A DNA stretch of 63,982 nucleotides, filler included, from Bigelowiella natans CCMP2755 (taxonomy: Eukaryota; Protista; Cercozoa), in assembly GCA_000320545.1 (NCBI GenBank). It is 4 parts of 4 records of this genome, joined end to end, with 100 filler letters (N's around TTAATTAATTAA, not from the genome) between each part and the next. Parts side by side here need not be neighbours in the genome. Positions count along the whole stretch, not along the records: positions 30,944 to 61,544 come from ADNK01002209.1; 3 more parts are not named here. The stretch is one strand, 5' to 3'. Positions 36,075 to 49,223 of this stretch are shown here, piece by piece (the first letter of the stretch is position 1; each line of letters opens with the position of its first letter). The notes beneath the pieces were generated by a model. It saw only the letters and a program-made list of their open reading frames with translations, did not search any database and had not been told where the DNA came from. Both the position numbers and the translations under genes were made by a program.

Positions 36075-38149
36075 ATGTCATCCAGCTCTCCCGCCGCTGG
36101 CAAGAAAGTCCTTCTTTTTGGAGTTGGACTTTCAACCCCACCGATGATCCACTACCTTACATCCTTTGGGATTAAGGTAACGGCATGCGCAAGGAATCCG
36201 AAGAAGATTCAAAAGGTTTGACAACTGCTGTTCATGCTCTGGAATGTGCGAGGAGTAGTCGATTTTTGAAATATCTTTCAGAGGATATTGAGGAAACGTA
36301 CCGTCTTTCATCCTGTAGTGGAGATTTATTTATGTGTGGTACTGTGAGGGCGCGTTTGGAGGGGGGGGGGGGGGGGGGGTATTGCACCATACATGTGGCA
36401 TTTTTAAAAGATCCAGTGTCCCTCATTGTCTCATCTCCAGGTTCTCGATGAAGTAAAGGATCAGAAATTGGTGAATTCGGAAGTCTTTGACATCTCATCC
36501 TCTGATTATGAGAAGCGTCTGGATGAACTTTGCCCTTCATGCGATATCATGGTCTCCATGATGCCTCCGCCATGTCACCCAAAGGTGATAGCACTGTTTT
36601 GCCGCGGCGTTTTTTCTTAGAAAGACGATTAGAGTAGGTAAGAAGATTTCGGTATCTTGGAGTAGGCAGAGTTTTGTTGGAAAAACACAGGATTCATATA
36701 CTATTAAATTTCAACAGATTGCTGCTGCCGCATTGAAGCATGGAAAGCACTTTTTCACTTCCTCTTATGTGTCAGAAGCTATGGAGAAGGTAAAGAAATA
36801 TGCAGTTGTAAATTTATCAACGCAATAACGACTGACATATTTCTTGTCTCCGCCTTTGCTTTTTATATTGCTGTTCTGTTTTGCTCTCGCATGAAACCTG
36901 CCCTGCTGCTCCGCTTCCCACAGCTTTCTCCGGAGTTTGAGAAGAAGGGATTACTTTCAATCAATGAGTGTGGAGTTGATCCAGGGCTTGACCACATGTC
37001 TGCAATGAAAGTCATCGATCACGTTCACAAGGAAGGAGGCAAGGTTCTTGGTTTCTTCTCGGTTTGCGGTGGTCTCCCTGGTACTACCTTTCCCCATACA
37101 TGCGCGCAAGCACACACAAACACACACACAAAGGAAAGGGGGGGGGGGGGGAGAGCTCACGCATGCAAGTGCGATTGATGTGGGACATATCATAAGATGA
37201 ACTATGTAATACTATTACAATGGATGAACCCATCACGAAAAAACAGAATTTCGAAAGTAGGGGAGAGCAGCAAAAAATAGGGAAAGAGAGGAGTGAAGCA
37301 GCCGTTTACTACTTGGAGGGCATTGTCTGTATGTCCTTCGAGAATTAAGGTTTGCAAGAGTACATCGCACCCCTTAAGGACAGGGCCGCTTCGGTTCTTA
37401 TTCCGTTTCTAGGCCGTGGGGATTGGTTGCGAACATTTAGGCAACATAAAACAATTTTTGATATTGTTACAAACAGTGTATATTGGTCCTAGTTAGTTTG
37501 TTGATGATGATTGTGATATTGGTGTTTCAACGCACAGCTCCCGAGTGCAACAACCCATTTGGTGGAGGATACAAGGTGCTGCTCTGCTACTGCTGCTGCT
37601 GTTTTTGTCCAACTTCTTCTCTTAAATGGTTCGCACACTCAGGCCATAATAATGTGGTGTATTGCTGTCATCATCATCATCATCATCATCATCATCACCA
37701 CCATCATATTGCTTGCTGCACGAAATTTTCGTAGGTCTCTTGGACTCCATACGGAGTTTTGTCAGCTGGGACTAATAATGCCATCTTCAAGTTTCAGGGA
37801 AAGAAAGTGGCTAAGCCTGGTTATCATCAATCGTTCTTTATCCTTATCGATGTATATGTTGTGAAGATGTATGTATATATGTATATTGTCACAAAGCGGC
37901 TAAGAGAGACTAGCATACTAATATTTGTAGTATTCCTTTCTTCTTCTTCTTCTTCTTCTTCTTCTTCTTCTTCTTCACATTCTTCCTGCAGCCTCCGCAA
38001 ACATTAACAACCACCTCTGGAACTTATTAGGTACTGAAATTTATGATCCTCCTGAGTTGAAGCACGTGATCGAAGTCAAGGGAAAGCCAACAACATTCGA
38101 ATGGTACATTTAATTCCATCTGCACCGAATATCGGATTTATGTGTACGA

Positions 38150-38192
<43 letters not shown>

Positions 38193-40704
38193 AATGTACA
38201 TAAATATTTTCAATCCATGAGAGAGCGAGAAGCTCCCTATCATTGTTTTTTTAAGCATGGTCGTTATGGTATGATGATCATCAGGTACCCAAACCGTGAC
38301 TCGACTCCTTACATCAAGCATTATGGCATGCCAGAGTGCCAATCGATCATCCGTGGGACTTACCGCAACAACGGATGGTGCAACACTCTGAGGGCTATTG
38401 CTCTTCTCGGTCTCAACGATAAGGAAGAGTCAAAGGTGCTATCTATCTATCTATCTATCTATCTTTTTGGATAGGGCAAGGGAGGGGAAGAGAATAAGAA
38501 CAAGTTGTAGTAATTGGATATTATCAGTACCCACCACACCTTCAGTATTAACATGTAACAACTGATACTGGATCCAGGAGGATTTGGGGAAAATGACATA
38601 CCTTGAGGCTGCTACATACATCTTCAACTCTCGCAGCGAAGAAAAGATCCCAAAAGGTTAGTTGCTGCTAAGAATTGTTTGTTTCTTCTCTTCTTCTGCT
38701 GCTGCTGCTTTAAGCAATACTTGTGGGGTGTATACAGCGGTCCCCCCCCCCCCCCCCCCCCTTTTTTTTTCTTCTGTTGACTAAAACTTTCACTATTGGG
38801 TGGGTAGAAATTGTAGTCAGTACTGTAGCAGTACCACTATCACCACCAGCAGCAGCAGCAGCAGCAGTGGTAGTTGTAGGCGGCATAGGAGTGAACTTGC
38901 GGAAGTTCTTTAAAGATCAACAGAAAGAAGACTGATGAATATTTCTTTATATTTAAGGAGCTTCTGCTGATGATGTTAAGAAAGCTTACGCTAAATTCCT
39001 CAAAAAGGACGTGAGTGACAAAGCAATCACAGACCTGGAATGGGTGGGACAGTTCTCCACAGACAAGATTCCAGAAGGTGCTATTTTGTACTTGTGAATC
39101 ACCTTTAGCACCAGCGAAACTTCTGCTCACTTCTCTCTCCCGATCTCTCACCCATCATCCACACTAATGCCACGCGAAGTAGCCAACATCATCATCATCA
39201 TCATCATAATTTTTATTACAGCGCACAAACTTTACTACTCACATCAGGCACTAAGGCTCCAATTGACATGATGTGTCACCTCTGGACAAGCAAGATGCAA
39301 TATGGTGAAGACGAGAAAGACATGATTGTCATGCAGCACCTTTTCGAGGTTGAATACAAAAACGGAGCACGCGAGGAGCTGACCTCAACGCTGATCCACT
39401 TCGGCCTGGGAAAGTACCACTACATTCCTTCAAAATTTACTGCTATGGCACGCACGGTCTCCCTTCCTCTAGCATGCGCTATCCGTATGAAACTGGAAGG
39501 AAGGATAAACAAGACAGGCGTGATCCGCCCTGTTGATGCTGACGTCTACGAACCCATTCTTGAGGAAGTAGCTAAGTTGTCCCCGGCTATCGAATTCAAG
39601 GAGGCAGCGCTTAAGCCTCAGATCTGGCTTAGGCATGAGGTAAAGCCTGGCGAGGAACGTTGCGCTCTCACCCCGGAAACCGCCAAGGAGCTCCTCGATG
39701 CTGGATTCAGGGTTACAGTTGAAAAGTCTCCAACTCGTTGCATCTCCATTGAGGAATATGAGAAAGTTGGATGCAATATTGCAGAGTCTTCATCTTGGCC
39801 CTCCGCTCCATACCCTAGCATAATTCTAGGACTTAAAGAACTGCCTGAGGATGACAGCGACCTTATCCATCGTCATATTCTCTTTGCCCACTGCTACAAG
39901 GAACAGGCTGGATGGAAAGAACTCCTTGCACGCTTTAAGAAAGGTGGTGGCACCCTGTACGACCTTGAGTTCTTGAAGCTCAATGGACGACGTGTGGCTG
40001 CCTTCGGTCGTCCTGCTGGTATGGCTGGAATGGCACTTGGACTCTGGCAATGGGCAATGCAGAAGCTTGGTAAGCCCGCGATCAAGGATCTATCGTCGTG
40101 GAAATCCAAGGAAGCGATGTGCGAAACCGTTCGTTCTGCACTGAAGGAAGTGGAGGAGAAAAAGGGTGGGTTGAAGCCCTCGGCGCTCATCATTGGTGCT
40201 CTAGGAAGGTGCGGGAAGGGTGCCACTTGGGTCGCAGAGCAATGCGGTGTAACACCCATCAAATGGGATATGCAGGAAACCAAAGGAGGGGGACCCTTCA
40301 AGGCACTGTTGGATGTGGATGTTCTTGTGAACTGTATTTACCTAACCTCCAAGATACCGTCATTCCTTACTAAGGAGATGATCACCCCCCCCGGGCGTAA
40401 ACTGTCGGTTTTTGTCGATGTTAGCTGCGATACCTCTAACCCGAACAACCCTTTCCCAATCTACAACCAGGGAACAACTCTGACGGCTCCAATTCTCTCA
40501 GTTGGCGACGAAAAGGCGCCTCTTGATGTCGTTGCGATCGATCATCTTCCATCTCTAATTCCTCTTGAAAGCTCTATTAACTACTCGAAAGATCTCATAC
40601 CTTACATCAAAGAGCTGATTGAGAAGGACGCCTTCTTTACCAAGCCTGTGTGGAAGGATGCTGGAGATCTTTACCTATCCAAGCTCAAGGAGGCTGGCCT
40701 CTAA
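36075..40704 (+). CDS. Bifunctional fusion: N-terminal saccharopine reductase (Lys9-type, glutamate-forming) plus C-terminal saccharopine dehydrogenase (Lys1-type, lysine-forming)
   Basis: Lys9 motifs across ~10 exons: KKVLLFGVG, TSSYVS, NECGVDPGLDHMSAMKVID, SVCGGLP|APE, YK|VSWTPYGVL, YPNRDS, RGTYR, DMIVMQH, AMARTVSLP. In ORF 39268-40704 the same frame continues without a stop into Lys1 motifs: IWLRHEVKPGEERCALTP, GLKELP, FAHCYKEQAGW, LYDLEFL, RRVAAFG, IIGALGRCGKGA, DVSCD, IDHLPSL. Confidence 0.92.
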
Positions 40705-41526: not shown

Positions 41527-43011
41527 TCAATTTACTGTCCTCTCTTTCAAGAATGGATGTGTGCTTTGTATGTCCAGCCATCTAAGAATTATCGCACATT
41601 CGACTCCCCGCTCCCATGCAAACCCGAACTGATGCACTCCCGATTCACTGTCATCCTCCACCTGTACGAGACTCCCTGCACTCCAAGACGGACGATGGAA
41701 ATTTGGATACGCTAAAGTCCCCCAGCCATGAAAGAAACGCTTAACCTTGAGAACCTTTTTGCTCTCACGGTTTCGAATTGTTTCTCCCACCGCACGTGTG
41801 AACTGCAGGAGGGGATGTACTAATGCTACGAATGTCTCATTCCCCAAAGGTACATGTATGTCGCCGGTCACTTTTTTGCCAACCACGAATATTATTTCCT
41901 TGACAGTCGCGTTTCCCATCCCATCGATAGATTGTTGTATTTCCTTCACTATTGAATTCCCACGCCCTGCAAATATTGTCTTACCTATATCGTCCCACAC
42001 ACGAGTACGCTCGTTTGTATTATGCAACGGAAATCTACGATATTCAATTAGTAGAATTTCGTGACGAAATTGGCCATAATGTTCCCCGTATGTCCCAGAG
42101 TATAATCCAGGCCTTATGATAGGCATATCAGCTGTGTACACTAGCTCAGATGTGCGCGTTGGACCGTCAACCCATTGAAATCGAAGCTCCTTCCCTTGGT
42201 ATTTTGATGCTGAAGAACTGCTCTTGCAGACCAACTCGAGTACCATTTTCCGTATATCTGGGGATTCATTCCAGTTTGGATTCCAGGGAAACCATAGTGA
42301 ATTAGGTAGATCGTCTACATTTTCACGGCCATCATCTCCTGTAAGATTGTCTAGTGAATCTTCCTTATGCTCCTCAGCGGTGCTAATACATGTCAGGGTC
42401 ATTGTCTCAACCGGGAATGCGGGAATACGCCCGAAAACTGTGGGAAAGATGTCGTTTGCAAGGATTGGAGATATAGATGTTCTGCCTATCCTATTTTGGC
42501 GGTTCTCTTTCGATTCAAATGTGACCCGAAATTTAAGGTTTGATCCTTCAAGTGAAGCGACACTCTTATCAACACAGCTCACATTGAATAAACGGTAGCA
42601 ATCCTGTTTTTGTTTTTCTTCGTTATATCTGACTACATCACACACAAAATTTCCGTCAAGAATTCTCATCAAGAACAGAATTCCCCAGGGATATGCATCT
42701 AAAAGGACATAGAAGCCTTCACGTGGCACCCAATGTTGTAATGTTGCGTACAGAGATTTCCAGGAGCTCATTTTGGGCCATTGGGTTAGGTGTTGCTCGG
42801 TAACTTTCCAACTTTGAATACATAACGGTTTCCATACACCACTCGTACAATTGAAGTGCTCCTTGTATATTTTCTTCGAAAGCATTGCTAACCTCAAGAC
42901 TTCACGCAGGTCATTGGTAACAAAGCTTATTATAAATGCTAATAAATCATGCGGAAGTTTATCAAGCTTTCCGCCCTTAGGTGTCAATGTACATGATTCC
43001 TCGATCTCCAT
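41527..43011 (-). CDS. F-box protein, FBXO31-like (DUF3506/cyclin D1-binding domain), intronless
   Basis: 494-aa ORF with an N-terminal F-box (LDKLPHDLLAFIISFV...LRLAMLSK). C-terminal PGLYSGTYG, GKKVTGDIHVPLG, GWGTLAYPNF and FGFAW resemble FBXO31/DUF3506. Confidence 0.75.
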   Translation of the reverse strand: MEIEESCTLTPKGGKLDKLPHDLLAFIISFVTNDLREVLRLAMLSKKIYKEHFNCTSGVWKPLCIQSWKVTEQHLTQWPKMSSWKSLYATLQHWVPREGFYVLLDAYPWGILFLMRILDGNFVCDVVRYNEEKQKQDCYRLFNVSCVDKSVASLEGSNLKFRVTFESKENRQNRIGRTSISPILANDIFPTVFGRIPAFPVETMTLTCISTAEEHKEDSLDNLTGDDGRENVDDLPNSLWFPWNPNWNESPDIRKMVLELVCKSSSSASKYQGKELRFQWVDGPTRTSELVYTADMPIIRPGLYSGTYGEHYGQFRHEILLIEYRRFPLHNTNERTRVWDDIGKTIFAGRGNSIVKEIQQSIDGMGNATVKEIIFVVGKKVTGDIHVPLGNETFVALVHPLLQFTRAVGETIRNRESKKVLKVKRFFHGWGTLAYPNFHRPSWSAGSLVQVEDDSESGVHQFGFAWERGVECAIILRWLDIQSTHPFLKERTVN

Positions 43012-45574: not shown

Positions 45575-46791
45575 CCACATCAAAATATATTCACGTTTCA
45601 TCGTGTATTGTTGAAAAATTGTCAATACTCCTCATAACTACACCGACCCCCAACAGAATAGGTGCCCACACTCGGTAGCTGTCGTATTGCGTCTGCGCCC
45701 AAAGCAGAATACGCATTTAGGCTCATCCTTTTCATCGAAGTCGCTTTCATCGTCTTCATCCTTTGTACCATCAGCTTTTCCAAGTATTGTGGTCGTTTCT
45801 GTCCCCATTTCTGTCCCCGTATTAACTGCAGTATTTGATGATGACGACGATTGCGACGTTCGCAGTAGGGTGCGCAGTCTTTCTGTGGTGAAGAGTAGCA
45901 GTGAGCCTGTCAGTTGAATCCCGAGGAGAAATCCAAGCACCTGTGTTACATTTATGATTATGATTGTGCTATTACTGACCCCGAATAGCAGGAGGAGGAG
46001 GAGGAGACGGATGCAATAGTACTACATACAACCTGATAACCCACTTGACCCCGTTGATTGCGCTGAAGGTATAGATACTGCACACCACAGAGCATCTTGG
46101 ACACTTCCAGGTAGCGCCCGAAGAGGTAGAAGAGGGCTGTGTGGAGGTCGCGAATAGAGTCGAGGTACGGATACACAGTCCGAAGTGAGGAAACGAACCA
46201 AGTGTATAGTACCGTCCGTAGGCCTCGCCGCCGTCTAACAGGACTATCATACTGATGACCCTCGCCGTCTTCTTCCTCATCAGCAGGCAACATACGAATT
46301 TCCGAAGAGATACGGCGAAACATGTAAGGGGTTAAGCATTGGAGGGCGACAAGACACAGCCGACGCATGCTGGAAGGTGGTCTTCTACTTCCATCAATCT
46401 GAACGGGACAATGGCAAAAATAAGAAGGATTCACTTGGGTGGTTGTACTATTGATGATGATGGCCAATTTCCTGCAACCTGCATAATGTCGCAGTATTCT
46501 TCTCCCAATGTTTGCTTCCCAAGGAGTGTGGTAAGTCCAAAGTAACAACAATAGGCAACCATACGTACTTCGTCCTAAAATGGTTCATAAGACATTAAGA
46601 TTTGTCAATTACATGCGGATGCTTGTGCTGGTACGTACCTCAACCCTCGCGGCGTGCCTACCAAGGATATCTGCGCTAAGTTTATCCAATCTTTGATGCA
46701 AATAAGACAAATAATATTGGTCTTTTTGCAAAGAACGGAGGATGTGAGCCTGGGGAGCTTGCTCAAAACCTGTGTAAGAAGGGGTGCTCAT
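45223..46791 (-). CDS. PEX10: Peroxin-10 RING-finger peroxisome biogenesis factor, ~5 exons
   Basis: N-terminal A....ILRSLQKDQYY, TLLGKQTLGEEYCDIMQ, LHTALFYLFGRYLEVSK. C-terminal RING CVFCFGRRRNTTATECGHLFCW|.CILSCCDRKAECPLCRQ. Confidence 0.92.
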
Positions 46792-47951: not shown

Positions 47952-49223
47952 ATGATAATCATGGCTTCTTCTTCTTCCCGGGTAGCTTCGAGTTGAATCA
48001 TGTCCCATGTGCAACACACACAACCAGATTACATGGAGTATCTATCAACCGATCCATCGTCGTTCCTACCTATCCTACATCTATCTACCTTCTATGATTT
48101 GAATCCGTTTTATGTAATTCAGGCATTCATTGCTCTCGGGTGTACATTATGCATCCTGCTTTTCTCCTTCAACGCCCGACACAACAATTTTTTCTCACAT
48201 AATCTCGCTAGATCCTTGCGTCAGCAGGGTAGGCAACAACAGAGACCCCTCCTTTGCACAAGCAAGTATAAGTATAAATACACTAGCCGAGACACGGAAA
48301 GAGGTTTTCTACGACGGCGCTGCATGCAAGAAGAGCAGAAAATATGGGGCCAATCTGCTGAACTAAGTATGTCCCCGGAAGATATCCGCAAGCACCTATG
48401 GGAATCAACTGATCTTTGGAACACAAGCATACACGCTGTGATGAAGTGCGGTGAGGGACCTGCGCAATTTAGGCTGGTTTATATGCCAATGCGTAATCGA
48501 ATTGAGGTTGCAAGACTCATGCTTGAAGATTCTCACTGTCCATATGAGCTTGAGCTGGTGGGGTTTCGAAAATGGAACGACCTTAAACTGAAAATGCTAT
48601 TGGGTAAGGTCCCTGTGCTTCGGAATTTCGACGGGCGTGGGAATGATCTGTCTAATGAGATCGCGATAACACAGTTTTTAGCAACGAAACTCGGCCTCAC
48701 AGGCAATTCCGACGAAGAAGCCGCTGTAGCTAACATGCTGTATACACAGTTCTTTTGCACCCTGCGGAACAATGGACTCAGTCATGATGGAGACCATTAC
48801 TCAGTCACAAGCCTAGTAGCGGCAAAAATCAACGAAGTTGACCTTTCATTACGACGAAGGTACCAAGAAATGCACCGAGTGAACGACTGGACACGACCAG
48901 AACGAAGTCTTGCCGCTCTGGGCGTGTTTGAGGAGCAACTTGTCAAAACTGGAACTGGATTTCTAGTAGGAAATACAATTACTTACGTGGATCTTGCCCT
49001 GTTCAATATTTTGTTTGAGCTTGCTGAGCCAGAAAATGTGCCAGATTTTTCCACAAGGTGGAATTTTCCAGCTTTAGGCAATTTTCTAAAGAGGTTGGAA
49101 CAACGACCAGGAATTCATTCCTATGTTCGATCTGCTCGAAGGATTCCTAGGTACGAACGTCCAGGATACGTCTACTGTGAAGGTAAGCATTGTTCTCGTC
49201 AACTAGAAGACAGCAGTCGGTGA
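47952..49223 (+). CDS. Glutathione S-transferase (sigma-like fold) with N-terminal signal/transit-like extension
   Basis: ORF 48000-49223 has FRLVYMPMRNRIEVARLMLE, GKVPVL, IAITQFLA.KLGL.G and FLVGNTITYVDLALF. Likely exon 1 MIIMASSSSR (47952-47981) splices to 48123 AFIALGCTLCILLFSF (hydrophobic), followed by an R/Q/S-rich leader. Confidence 0.85.

What the first reader, a model, noticed from the sequence alone, without database searches (positions are those of the whole stretch)
36075..40704. Lys9-Lys1 saccharopine dehydrogenase fusion in reverse order to animal/plant AASS
Seen: one reading frame carries a saccharopine reductase (Lys9-type) followed directly by a Lys1-type enzyme. The junction (...SPAIEFKEAALKPQIWLRHEVKP...) lies inside one exon with no stop, so it is not a gene-model merging artefact. 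The Lys1 catalytic Lys (GLKELP) and His (FAHCYK) are intact. Known: fungi encode Lys9 and Lys1 separately for the last two steps of alpha-aminoadipate lysine synthesis, while the catabolic LKR-SDH (AASS) of animals and plants has the opposite domain order and an LKR domain distinct from the fungal Lys1 type. Inference: an independently evolved bifunctional enzyme arranged in biosynthetic order, possibly channelling saccharopine, hinting at alpha-aminoadipate lysine synthesis (or a convergent catabolic enzyme) in this protist.
Basis: partly seen in the sequence, partly recalled or inferred. Interest (0 to 1): 0.8.

Follow-up and report, generated by a model that had tools for sequence, protein, structure and literature searches.

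The report
Reverse-order Lys9-Lys1 saccharopine enzyme fusion
A chlorarachniophyte alga carries a real, transcribed gene that joins the last two fungal-type lysine-pathway enzymes (Lys9 then Lys1) into one protein, and the same fusion occurs across rhizarian protists; relatives' fused proteins are already in sequence databases, no paper on it turned up, and its metabolic direction is unknown.

Summary
Window 36075-40704 (+) holds an 11-exon, all GT-AG gene of 838 codons. Exons 1-10 and the start of exon 11 encode a Lys9-type saccharopine reductase. The rest of exon 11 encodes a complete Lys1-type saccharopine dehydrogenase. The junction (about nt 39616) lies inside exon 11. A public transcript contig that is 99.8-100% identical is spliced across exons 5-11 and runs through the junction into the 3' UTR.

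The Lys1 half is fungal-type (yeast Lys1 E 1e-93; human AASS LKR 1e-12). The catalytic Lys and His are intact.

The fusion is not unique. Proteins of 760-880 aa with the same order occur in other chlorarachniophytes, Mataza, Lapot, Leptophrys, Nonionella, Paulinella and a cercozoan genome, and apparently in Paramoeba and Chloroparvula. The junction length is conserved in all 45 compared.

All fusions keep the fungal cofactor signatures: Arg (NADP type) in the Lys9 half and Asp (NAD type) in the Lys1 half. This is the opposite of AASS. In one unidentified eukaryote the fusion gene lies next to a Lys2 orthologue. Both points lean towards the semialdehyde-to-lysine direction, but I found no Lys2 in Rhizaria, so the direction stays open.

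Rating: new variant of a known kind, moderate interest.

The parts
36075..36215 (+). Exon 1. Start codon and Rossmann beta1-alphaA-beta2 of the Lys9 half, with the GVGLST glycine loop (36120-36137) and TACAR (36180-36194), whose Arg is the NADP-type residue.
   Evidence: Aligns to residues 2-36 of Magnaporthe saccharopine reductase. The Arg is conserved in all fusions whose N-terminus is complete.
36441..36584 (+). Exon 2 (Sacchrp_dh_NADP part).
   Evidence: PF03435 positions 42-82.
36718..36789 (+). Exon 3.
   Evidence: 85% identical to the Chlorarachnion orthologue.
36924..37080 (+). Exon 4 (start of Sacchrp_dh_C, NECGVDPGLDHM motif).
   Evidence: PF16653 positions 1-36, E 3e-11.
37538..37575 (+). 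Exon 5 (38 nt).
   Evidence: Transcript L001; phases.
37735..37819 (+). Exon 6.
   Evidence: Spliced in L001. PF16653 positions 49-76.
38031..38103 (+). Exon 7.
   Evidence: Spliced in L001.
38285..38435 (+). Exon 8 (YPNRDS motif).
   Evidence: Spliced in L001. PF16653 positions 97-144.
38578..38656 (+). Exon 9.
   Evidence: Found only through the transcript-derived protein P0121 and L001.
38958..39077 (+). Exon 10.
39248..40704 (+). Exon 11. End of the Lys9 half (to about 39600), the junction, the whole Lys1 half and the stop codon.
39556..39639 (+). Lys9|Lys1 junction (ILEEVAK...PQIWLRHE). Lys1 starts at about nt 39616, residue 477 of 838. There is no flexible linker.
   Evidence: Junction length is conserved within 0-3 residues in 45 fusion proteins. 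The orthologue's AlphaFold model has block-mean pLDDT of 92, 96 and 85 for residues 461-470, 471-480 and 481-490, with beta strands on both sides of the junction.
39829..39900 (+). Lys1 catalytic motifs GLKELP (Lys, residue 550 of the model) and FAHCYK (His).
   Evidence: Aligned to the same motifs of yeast Lys1. The Lys and His are kept in all 45 fusions.
40195..40269 (+). Lys1 dinucleotide fold: GALGRCGKG loop and the KWD Asp (NAD type).
   Evidence: The role of this Asp, against Ser-Arg in the human LOR domain, is described in PMC9490328.
40705..40918 (+). 3' UTR, at least to 40918.
   Evidence: The end of transcript contig L001 maps here.

Best explanation
The gene encodes one 838-residue cytosolic polypeptide with two complete oxidoreductases joined head to tail by a short, structured junction. 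The N-terminal half is a Lys9-type saccharopine reductase that uses NADP(H). It interconverts 2-aminoadipate 6-semialdehyde plus glutamate and saccharopine. The C-terminal half is a fungal Lys1-type saccharopine dehydrogenase that uses NAD(H). It interconverts saccharopine and lysine plus 2-oxoglutarate. Together they move the glutamate amino group onto the semialdehyde to make lysine, or run the reverse. This identity is close to certain (about 0.95). The fusion is old and was inherited. It is shared by Rhizaria and some other protists, and it arose independently of animal and plant AASS. My committed but weak reading of the direction (about 0.5) is that it runs as in fungi, from the semialdehyde to lysine. 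Both halves keep the cofactor preferences that drive the fungal enzymes that way. The source of the semialdehyde in this alga is not known; it could be a Lys2-type reductase or piperideine-6-carboxylate from another route. Shown here: gene structure, single mRNA, domain identity, conserved residues and distribution. Inferred: cofactor use, direction, cytosolic location and any channelling.
For: Gene model and transcript.
Lys1 identity: yeast Lys1 E 1.4e-93 over its full length, with catalytic Lys and His.
Lys9 identity: the orthologue P0001 residues 1-475 against Magnaporthe saccharopine reductase, E 1.7e-74; exon 1 aligns to its residues 2-36.
Structure: the AlphaFold2 model of the orthologue has pLDDT 91.3 and pTM 0.86, and each half matches the fungal crystal structures at TM 0.90-0.93.
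Cofactor signatures: the fusions have Arg after beta2 (xSRT or CARN), like fungal VACRT, where human AASS SDH has VGSDM. Their Lys1 half has WD like yeast. PMC9490328 states that this Asp binds the NADH ribose in yeast, is replaced by Ser266/Arg267 in human LOR, and that the cofactor choice sets the direction.
Synteny: in contigs L002 and L004, and on a third 9.8-kb contig of the same lineage whose DNA was not retrievable, the fusion gene is tail to tail with a gene that matches TIGR03443 (Lys2) at 1023 bits over profile positions 2-1362.
No N-terminal extension in most orthologues.
Against: The organism is a photosynthetic alga, and a survey places the diaminopimelate pathway in Rhizaria (PMC3287585). 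An aminoadipate route would therefore be redundant.
No Lys2 from any rhizarian appeared in two protein searches and one metagenome scan. All three were swamped by bacterial NRPS and are uninformative rather than negative.
Lys2 adjacency was not seen near the fusion in a cercozoan genome or three other contigs, nor near Lys2 in two other eukaryotic contigs.
The two fungal steps are reversible and are used for lysine breakdown in some fungi (PMC9854754).
Cofactor preference is read from motifs, not measured.
Confidence: 0.5

Rival explanations
1. Same bifunctional enzyme, but its physiological role is lysine breakdown: lysine to saccharopine to aminoadipate semialdehyde. On this reading it is the rhizarian counterpart of AASS, assembled independently from the Lys1 and Lys9 types, and lysine synthesis is left to the plastid diaminopimelate pathway or to prey.
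For: The fusion occurs in phagotrophic, plastid-free Rhizaria (Leptophrys, Mataza, Lapot, Nonionella) as well as in algae. Breakdown is a need they all share.
The diaminopimelate pathway is reported for Rhizaria. Lysine synthesis is called compromised in Plasmodiophora.
The fungal enzymes run in reverse when lysine is abundant.
No rhizarian Lys2 was found.
Against: Both cofactor signatures are the biosynthetic fungal ones and are conserved in all fusions compared. AASS changed both signatures to favour breakdown.
The fusion gene is adjacent to Lys2 in one lineage.
Whether Rhizaria also have a canonical AASS was not tested.
Confidence: 0.35
2. The fusion is not expressed as one protein. On this reading the functional product is a monofunctional Lys1 made from exon 11 alone, as in the 405-aa protein already on record for this locus, and the upstream Lys9 exons belong to a separate gene or transcript.
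For: The protein on record for the window (P0003, 405 aa) starts at an internal Met of exon 11.
The only transcript contig from this organism starts inside intron 4 and lacks exons 1-4.
A few genuinely stand-alone Lys1 proteins sit inside the fusion-type clade.
Against: The transcript is spliced from exon 5 to exon 11 in frame and has no stop before the Lys1 half.
P0003 begins in the middle of the Lys9 C-terminal domain, which fits a truncated gene call.
Complete 836-840-aa transcript ORFs exist in three related genera, and an uninterrupted single-exon 844-aa copy exists in another genome.
The junction is conserved in 45 proteins.
Confidence: 0.03

Closest known systems
Saccharomyces cerevisiae Lys1, saccharopine dehydrogenase (NAD+, L-lysine-forming), EC 1.5.1.7 (PDB 2QRJ, 2Q99, 3UGK)
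   Same: Full-length alignment at E 1e-93. The model of the orthologue superposes at TM 0.90-0.93 with 42% identity. The catalytic Lys and His, the IDHLP motif and the NAD-type Asp are kept.
   Different: Here it is the C-terminal half of an 838-aa protein and has no start of its own. It has no SKL/SRL-type peroxisomal targeting tripeptide; the protein ends in AGL (sequence).
Fungal Lys9 / saccharopine reductase (NADP+, L-glutamate-forming), EC 1.5.1.10 (Magnaporthe 1E5Q/1FF9, yeast 2AXQ)
   Same: Three-domain fold, TM 0.89-0.93. E 1.7e-74 for the orthologue. NADP-type Arg after beta2. NECGVDPGLDHM and YPNRDS motifs.
   Different: Fused at its C-terminus to Lys1. It has a small Gly-Gly insertion in the GYK(F)SW motif, and its glycine loop reads GVGLST.
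AASS / LKR-SDH of animals, plants and Dictyostelium (EC 1.5.1.8 + 1.5.1.9)
   Same: One polypeptide carrying a Lys1-homologous and a Lys9-homologous domain that act on saccharopine (PMC9490328).
   Different: The order is reversed. The AASS LKR domain is only distantly related (50 bits, about 20% identity, TM 0.66) and has large insertions. The cofactor signatures are swapped on both domains: Ser-Arg in LOR and Asp in SDH.
Spermidine synthase-saccharopine reductase fusion of basidiomycetes (PMC10051792)
   Same: Another natural fusion involving Lys9.
   Different: The partner is a polyamine enzyme at the N-terminus, not the next enzyme of the lysine pathway.

Membership tests
Lys1-type saccharopine dehydrogenase (EC 1.5.1.7) | End-to-end homology to characterised Lys1, clearly better than to AASS LKR or alanine dehydrogenase | tested here: met
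   yeast Lys1 317 bits, AASS LKR 50 bits, transhydrogenase 23 bits. TM 0.90-0.93 against 0.66.
Lys1-type saccharopine dehydrogenase (EC 1.5.1.7) | Catalytic Lys (GLKE) and His (FAHCYK) present | tested here: met
   That these are the acid-base residues rests on the published yeast work, recalled from my own knowledge.
Lys1-type saccharopine dehydrogenase (EC 1.5.1.7) | NAD-type acidic residue at the end of beta2 of the dinucleotide fold | tested here: met
   KWD at 40261-40269 aligns with yeast KWD. Conserved in all 45 fusions. Role described in PMC9490328.
Lys1-type saccharopine dehydrogenase (EC 1.5.1.7) | Measured activity with saccharopine and NAD+ | not testable with these tools
   Needs recombinant enzyme.
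Lys9-type saccharopine reductase (EC 1.5.1.10) | Sacchrp_dh_NADP plus Sacchrp_dh_C domains, collinear and complete | tested here: met
   Exon-by-exon Pfam hits are collinear. The orthologue P0001 aligns 8-461 to 1E5L 4-437.
Lys9-type saccharopine reductase (EC 1.5.1.10) | NADP-type Arg after beta2 (fungal VACR), where AASS SDH has Asp | tested here: met
AASS / LKR-SDH bifunctional enzyme | LKR domain N-terminal, SDH domain C-terminal | tested here: not met
   The order here is SDH-like first and Lys1-like second.
AASS / LKR-SDH bifunctional enzyme | LKR (LOR) type domain with NADPH-binding Ser-Arg and its two insertions | tested here: not met
Alpha-aminoadipate lysine biosynthesis pathway (organism level) | Lys2 (aminoadipate reductase) and homocitrate-branch genes in the same genome | tested here: inconclusive
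   No rhizarian Lys2 was seen, but the lists were dominated by bacterial NRPS.
Alpha-aminoadipate lysine biosynthesis pathway (organism level) | Genomic linkage of the fusion gene to other pathway genes | tested here: not met
   The window neighbours are unrelated: Cyclin_D1_bind-like, Pex2/Pex12 and GST. Linkage to Lys2 exists only in another, unidentified eukaryote.

The most novel reading that the evidence does not exclude
Rhizaria, and some other protists, make or salvage lysine through a rigid two-enzyme Lys9-Lys1 machine that passes saccharopine between its active sites. This would be part of a lower aminoadipate pathway that is far more widespread in eukaryotes than the textbook 'fungi and euglenids'. 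In other protists the same pathway is built from a second fusion, a Lys1-like domain joined to Lys2. The reverse-order fusion would then be both an undescribed biosynthetic module and a rare genomic change useful for deep eukaryote phylogeny.
Probability: 0.3. Interest if true: 0.7.

Novelty: new variant of a known kind. Interest (0 to 1): 0.5.

Why it matters
Both enzyme types are textbook. A conserved Lys9-to-Lys1 polypeptide is not described in any paper I could find, although relatives' sequences are deposited. It shows that the saccharopine steps were fused twice in eukaryotes, in opposite orders and from different Lys1-family lineages, which makes a natural comparison for how domain order and cofactor choice relate to pathway direction. 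It raises a testable question: do Rhizaria have an aminoadipate-type route to lysine, or did they build their own catabolic enzyme? It also corrects the protein on record for this locus, which holds only the Lys1 part. The conserved junction could serve as a phylogenetic marker.

Tried and rejected
A public transcript contig served as evidence instead.

Exons were searched by reference, and the natural proteins P0121 (same organism, exons 5-11) and P0001 (Chlorarachnion, full length) stood in for it.

Lys2 in this organism or in Rhizaria: two protein searches with a Lys2 orthologue and one metagenome scan with a Lys2 alignment were dominated by bacterial NRPS. None of the 80 loci came from the transcriptome sample that matches the window. 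This is uninformative, not negative.

Conserved synteny: no Lys2 lies near the fusion in a cercozoan genome, a Paramoeba-like contig and two others. No fusion gene lies near Lys2 in L007 and L008.

The ESM Atlas look-up returned AASS-type clusters with the same domain content and cannot tell the order apart.

A gene-merging artefact and an assembly chimera are rejected on transcript and orthologue evidence.

The large representative search was not spent, because the claim does not rest on an absence of relatives.
Full report
WHAT IS THERE

The stretch 36075-40704 (+) is one protein-coding gene. The last reading frame, open from 39109 with the stop at 40702-40704, carries the end of the Sacchrp_dh_C domain. 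AlaDh_PNT_N and AlaDh_PNT_C follow directly. Against solved structures it aligns with yeast Lys1 over nearly its whole length (E 1.4e-93). It aligns with the human AASS LKR domain only weakly (E 1e-12). Its first 110 residues align with the C-terminal ends of fungal saccharopine reductases and of the AASS SDH domain.

GENE MODEL

A full-length 836-aa transcript protein from Chlorarachnion reptans (P0001, 88% identical in the last exon) maps collinearly onto the window in ten blocks. A 677-aa protein of the same 90% cluster as the window's own product (P0121) supplied the missing block. Its 2613-nt transcript contig L001 (JGI sample 3300017192) is 99.8-100% identical to the window.

From these I derived 11 exons: 36075-36215, 36441-36584, 36718-36789, 36924-37080, 37538-37575, 37735-37819, 38031-38103, 38285-38435, 38578-38656, 38958-39077 and 39248-40704. 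All introns are GT-AG (133-457 nt). The phases are consistent and no exon contains a stop. The total is 2517 nt, or 838 codons plus the stop. Pfam hits exon by exon are collinear with PF03435, then PF16653, then PF05222 and PF01262.

Exons were searched by reference, and the natural proteins P0121 and P0001 stood in for the whole.

ONE mRNA

L001 starts inside intron 4 (37142). It is then spliced exactly at the borders of exons 5 to 11 and continues through the junction (about nt 39616) and the stop to 40918.

Exons 1-4 are supported only by homology to complete transcript ORFs of Chlorarachnion, Gymnochlora and Lotharella (836-840 aa).

The protein already on record for this locus (P0003, 405 aa) starts at an internal Met in the middle of the Lys9 C-terminal domain. 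That is a truncated call.

WHOSE GENOME

The nearest named relatives are chlorarachniophytes. The introns are short and rich in microsatellites. The organism is most likely Bigelowiella natans; this is an inference and no tool named it.

THE TWO HALVES

For the orthologue P0001, residues 8-461 align with Magnaporthe saccharopine reductase (E 1.7e-74), yeast Lys9 (1.3e-71) and the human AASS SDH domain (6e-62). The window's exon 1 aligns with residues 2-36 of the Magnaporthe enzyme.

An AlphaFold2 model of P0001, built with 30 fusion sequences, has mean pLDDT 91.3 and pTM 0.86. The junction is modelled with confidence: block means are 92, 96 and 85 for residues 461-490, and a beta strand lies on each side. 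Foldseek matches the C-terminal half to yeast Lys1 (TM 0.90-0.93, 42% identity) and the N-terminal half to fungal saccharopine reductases (TM 0.89-0.93). The human LOR domain matches at only 0.66. No solved chain covers both halves.

The catalytic Lys (GLKELP) and His (FAHCYK) and the IDHLP motif are intact here. The Lys and His are kept in all 45 fusion proteins compared. IDHLP is kept in all but four, which read IDNLP or VDYLP.

DISTRIBUTION

A word search with the last exon returned many proteins of 760-880 aa carrying PF03435, PF16653 and PF05222 at 45-88% identity. The named ones are:
- Chlorarachnion, Gymnochlora and Lotharella
- Mataza, Lapot gusevi and Leptophrys vorax
- Nonionella stella and two Paulinella species
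- Cercozoa sp. M6MM

All of these are Rhizaria. Two further named sources are Paramoeba aestuarina (Amoebozoa) and Chloroparvula japonica (a green alga from MMETSP). Contamination was not excluded for those two.

Several copies are uninterrupted ORFs on long, clearly eukaryotic contigs, so the fusion cannot be a gene-model artefact there. The junction differs by only 0-3 residues in length across all 45.

In a tree of the Lys1 half, 50 proteins form a well-supported clade (SH-aLRT 98). They come from fungi, choanoflagellates, Syssomonas, Arcella and others. Forty-nine are stand-alone Lys1. The fiftieth is a coral protein (Stylophora) whose N-terminal extension is not Lys9. The fusions lie outside this clade.

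Some 'stand-alone' rows among the fusions are truncated calls that still carry Lys9 tail residues. A few begin with Met exactly at the Lys1 start and look genuinely separate. One main fusion (or fission) event plus a few secondary changes fits the data. The tree is unrooted, so gain and loss cannot be told apart.

DIRECTION OF THE PATHWAY

Two lines of evidence lean towards the fungal, lysine-forming direction.

The first is the cofactor signatures. After beta2 of the Lys9 Rossmann fold, all fusions have Arg (CARN, xSRT or xTRT), as in fungal VACRT. Human AASS SDH has VGSDM there. In the Lys1 half all fusions have the WD of yeast. The human LOR structure paper states three things: this Asp binds the NADH ribose in yeast; it is replaced by Ser266/Arg267 for NADPH in humans; and the choice of cofactor drives the reaction direction (PMC9490328).

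The second is gene neighbourhood. In an unidentified intron-poor eukaryote (contigs L002 and L004, plus a third contig without retrievable DNA), the fusion gene lies tail to tail with a 1931-1990-aa gene. Residues 634-1964 of the 1990-aa product on L002 match the Lys2 model TIGR03443 at 1023 bits, just under the cut-off of 1030, over profile positions 2-1362.

Four points weigh against this reading.
- The alga is photosynthetic, and a comparative survey assigns the diaminopimelate pathway to Rhizaria (PMC3287585).
- The Lys2 adjacency was not seen in the six other contigs examined: four carrying the fusion gene and two carrying a Lys2-like gene.
- No rhizarian Lys2 appeared, although those lists were swamped by bacterial NRPS.
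- The two fungal steps are reversible and serve lysine breakdown in some fungi (PMC9854754).

I therefore give about 0.5 to the semialdehyde-to-lysine direction and 0.35 to a catabolic role. The enzymatic identity itself is near certain. Most orthologues lack an N-terminal extension, and this protein ends in AGL, so a cytosolic location is likely (inference).

COMPARISON WITH WHAT IS KNOWN

AASS has the opposite order, a distantly related LKR domain and swapped cofactor signatures. This fusion is therefore an independent invention, not a rearranged AASS.

In ten searches of the held full-text library, none of the papers I inspected describes a Lys9-Lys1 fusion or links saccharopine or aminoadipate metabolism to Rhizaria. 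Subscription papers are outside that library. The sequences of relatives are public and annotated simply as saccharopine dehydrogenase.

VERDICT

The 'independent, reverse-order fusion' reading is supported. 'Aminoadipate lysine synthesis in this protist' remains an open and testable hypothesis. The architecture is widespread rather than unique. I rate it a new variant of a known kind, with moderate interest.

Noticed in passing
L002:10442-16414 (-), outside the window; also P0141, P0181, L007:3283-8844, L008:6545-11929: There is a second lysine-pathway fusion in other protists. A Lys1 paralogue (36% identical, E 1e-60 to the window's Lys1 half) with altered key residues (GLKELP to GLRALP, IDHLP to IPTLT, glycine loop changed) is joined N-terminally to a full Lys2 orthologue, giving proteins of 1790-1990 aa. 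It is present in Phalansterium solitarium and several unnamed eukaryotic contigs. Rigifila Lys2 (P0140) also has a partial Lys1-like N-terminus. It may be a pseudo-enzyme or docking domain.
   Followed up: partly
window 39487-40704 (protein P0003): The protein on record for this locus (405 aa, listed as the window's own) starts at an internal Met of exon 11 inside the Lys9 C-terminal domain. The deposited model misses exons 1-10 and hides the fusion in this species.
   Followed up: yes
window 37142-37537 (intron 4) / L001:1-396: The only same-species transcript contig begins inside intron 4 and reads through into exon 5. This is either unspliced pre-mRNA or an internal start. Its called ORF (P0121) starts at a Met in intron sequence and would lack the NADP-binding domain.
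   Followed up: partly
window introns, e.g. 37640-37700, 37930-37990, 38150-38200, 38720-38900: The introns carry long trinucleotide and dinucleotide microsatellites. In translation they read as runs of H, S, I, L or P, and as (CA)n. They create spurious long ORFs on both strands.
   Followed up: no
L006:4705-7239 (GCA_977009605.1): An 844-aa orthologue, 71% identical to the query (the window's exon 11), is encoded as a single uninterrupted exon in another genome assembly. The window gene has 10 introns. It is sister to the named chlorarachniophytes in the Lys1 tree.
   Followed up: partly
P0023, P0025, P0026, P0028, P0038, P0049, P0085 (Logan transcript-sized contigs): These are genuinely stand-alone Lys1 proteins that start with Met right at the Lys1 N-terminus, yet they nest inside the fusion-type clade next to the Mataza group. 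They suggest secondary fission or separate monofunctional genes in some lineages.
   Followed up: partly
window 41527-43011 (-), 45958-46551 (-), 48000-49223 (+): The neighbouring ORFs are a Cyclin_D1_bind-domain protein (494 aa), a Pex2/Pex12 peroxin fragment and a GST C-terminal-domain protein. None is related to lysine metabolism.
   Followed up: partly
P0061, P0083 (784-820 aa): These fusion relatives start within Sacchrp_dh_C and lack the Rossmann domain, yet are as long as complete fusions. In P0083 the 256 Sacchrp_dh_C profile positions span 383 residues, which suggests large insertions in that domain; P0061 was not scanned, and I did not locate where the remaining extra length lies.
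   Followed up: no
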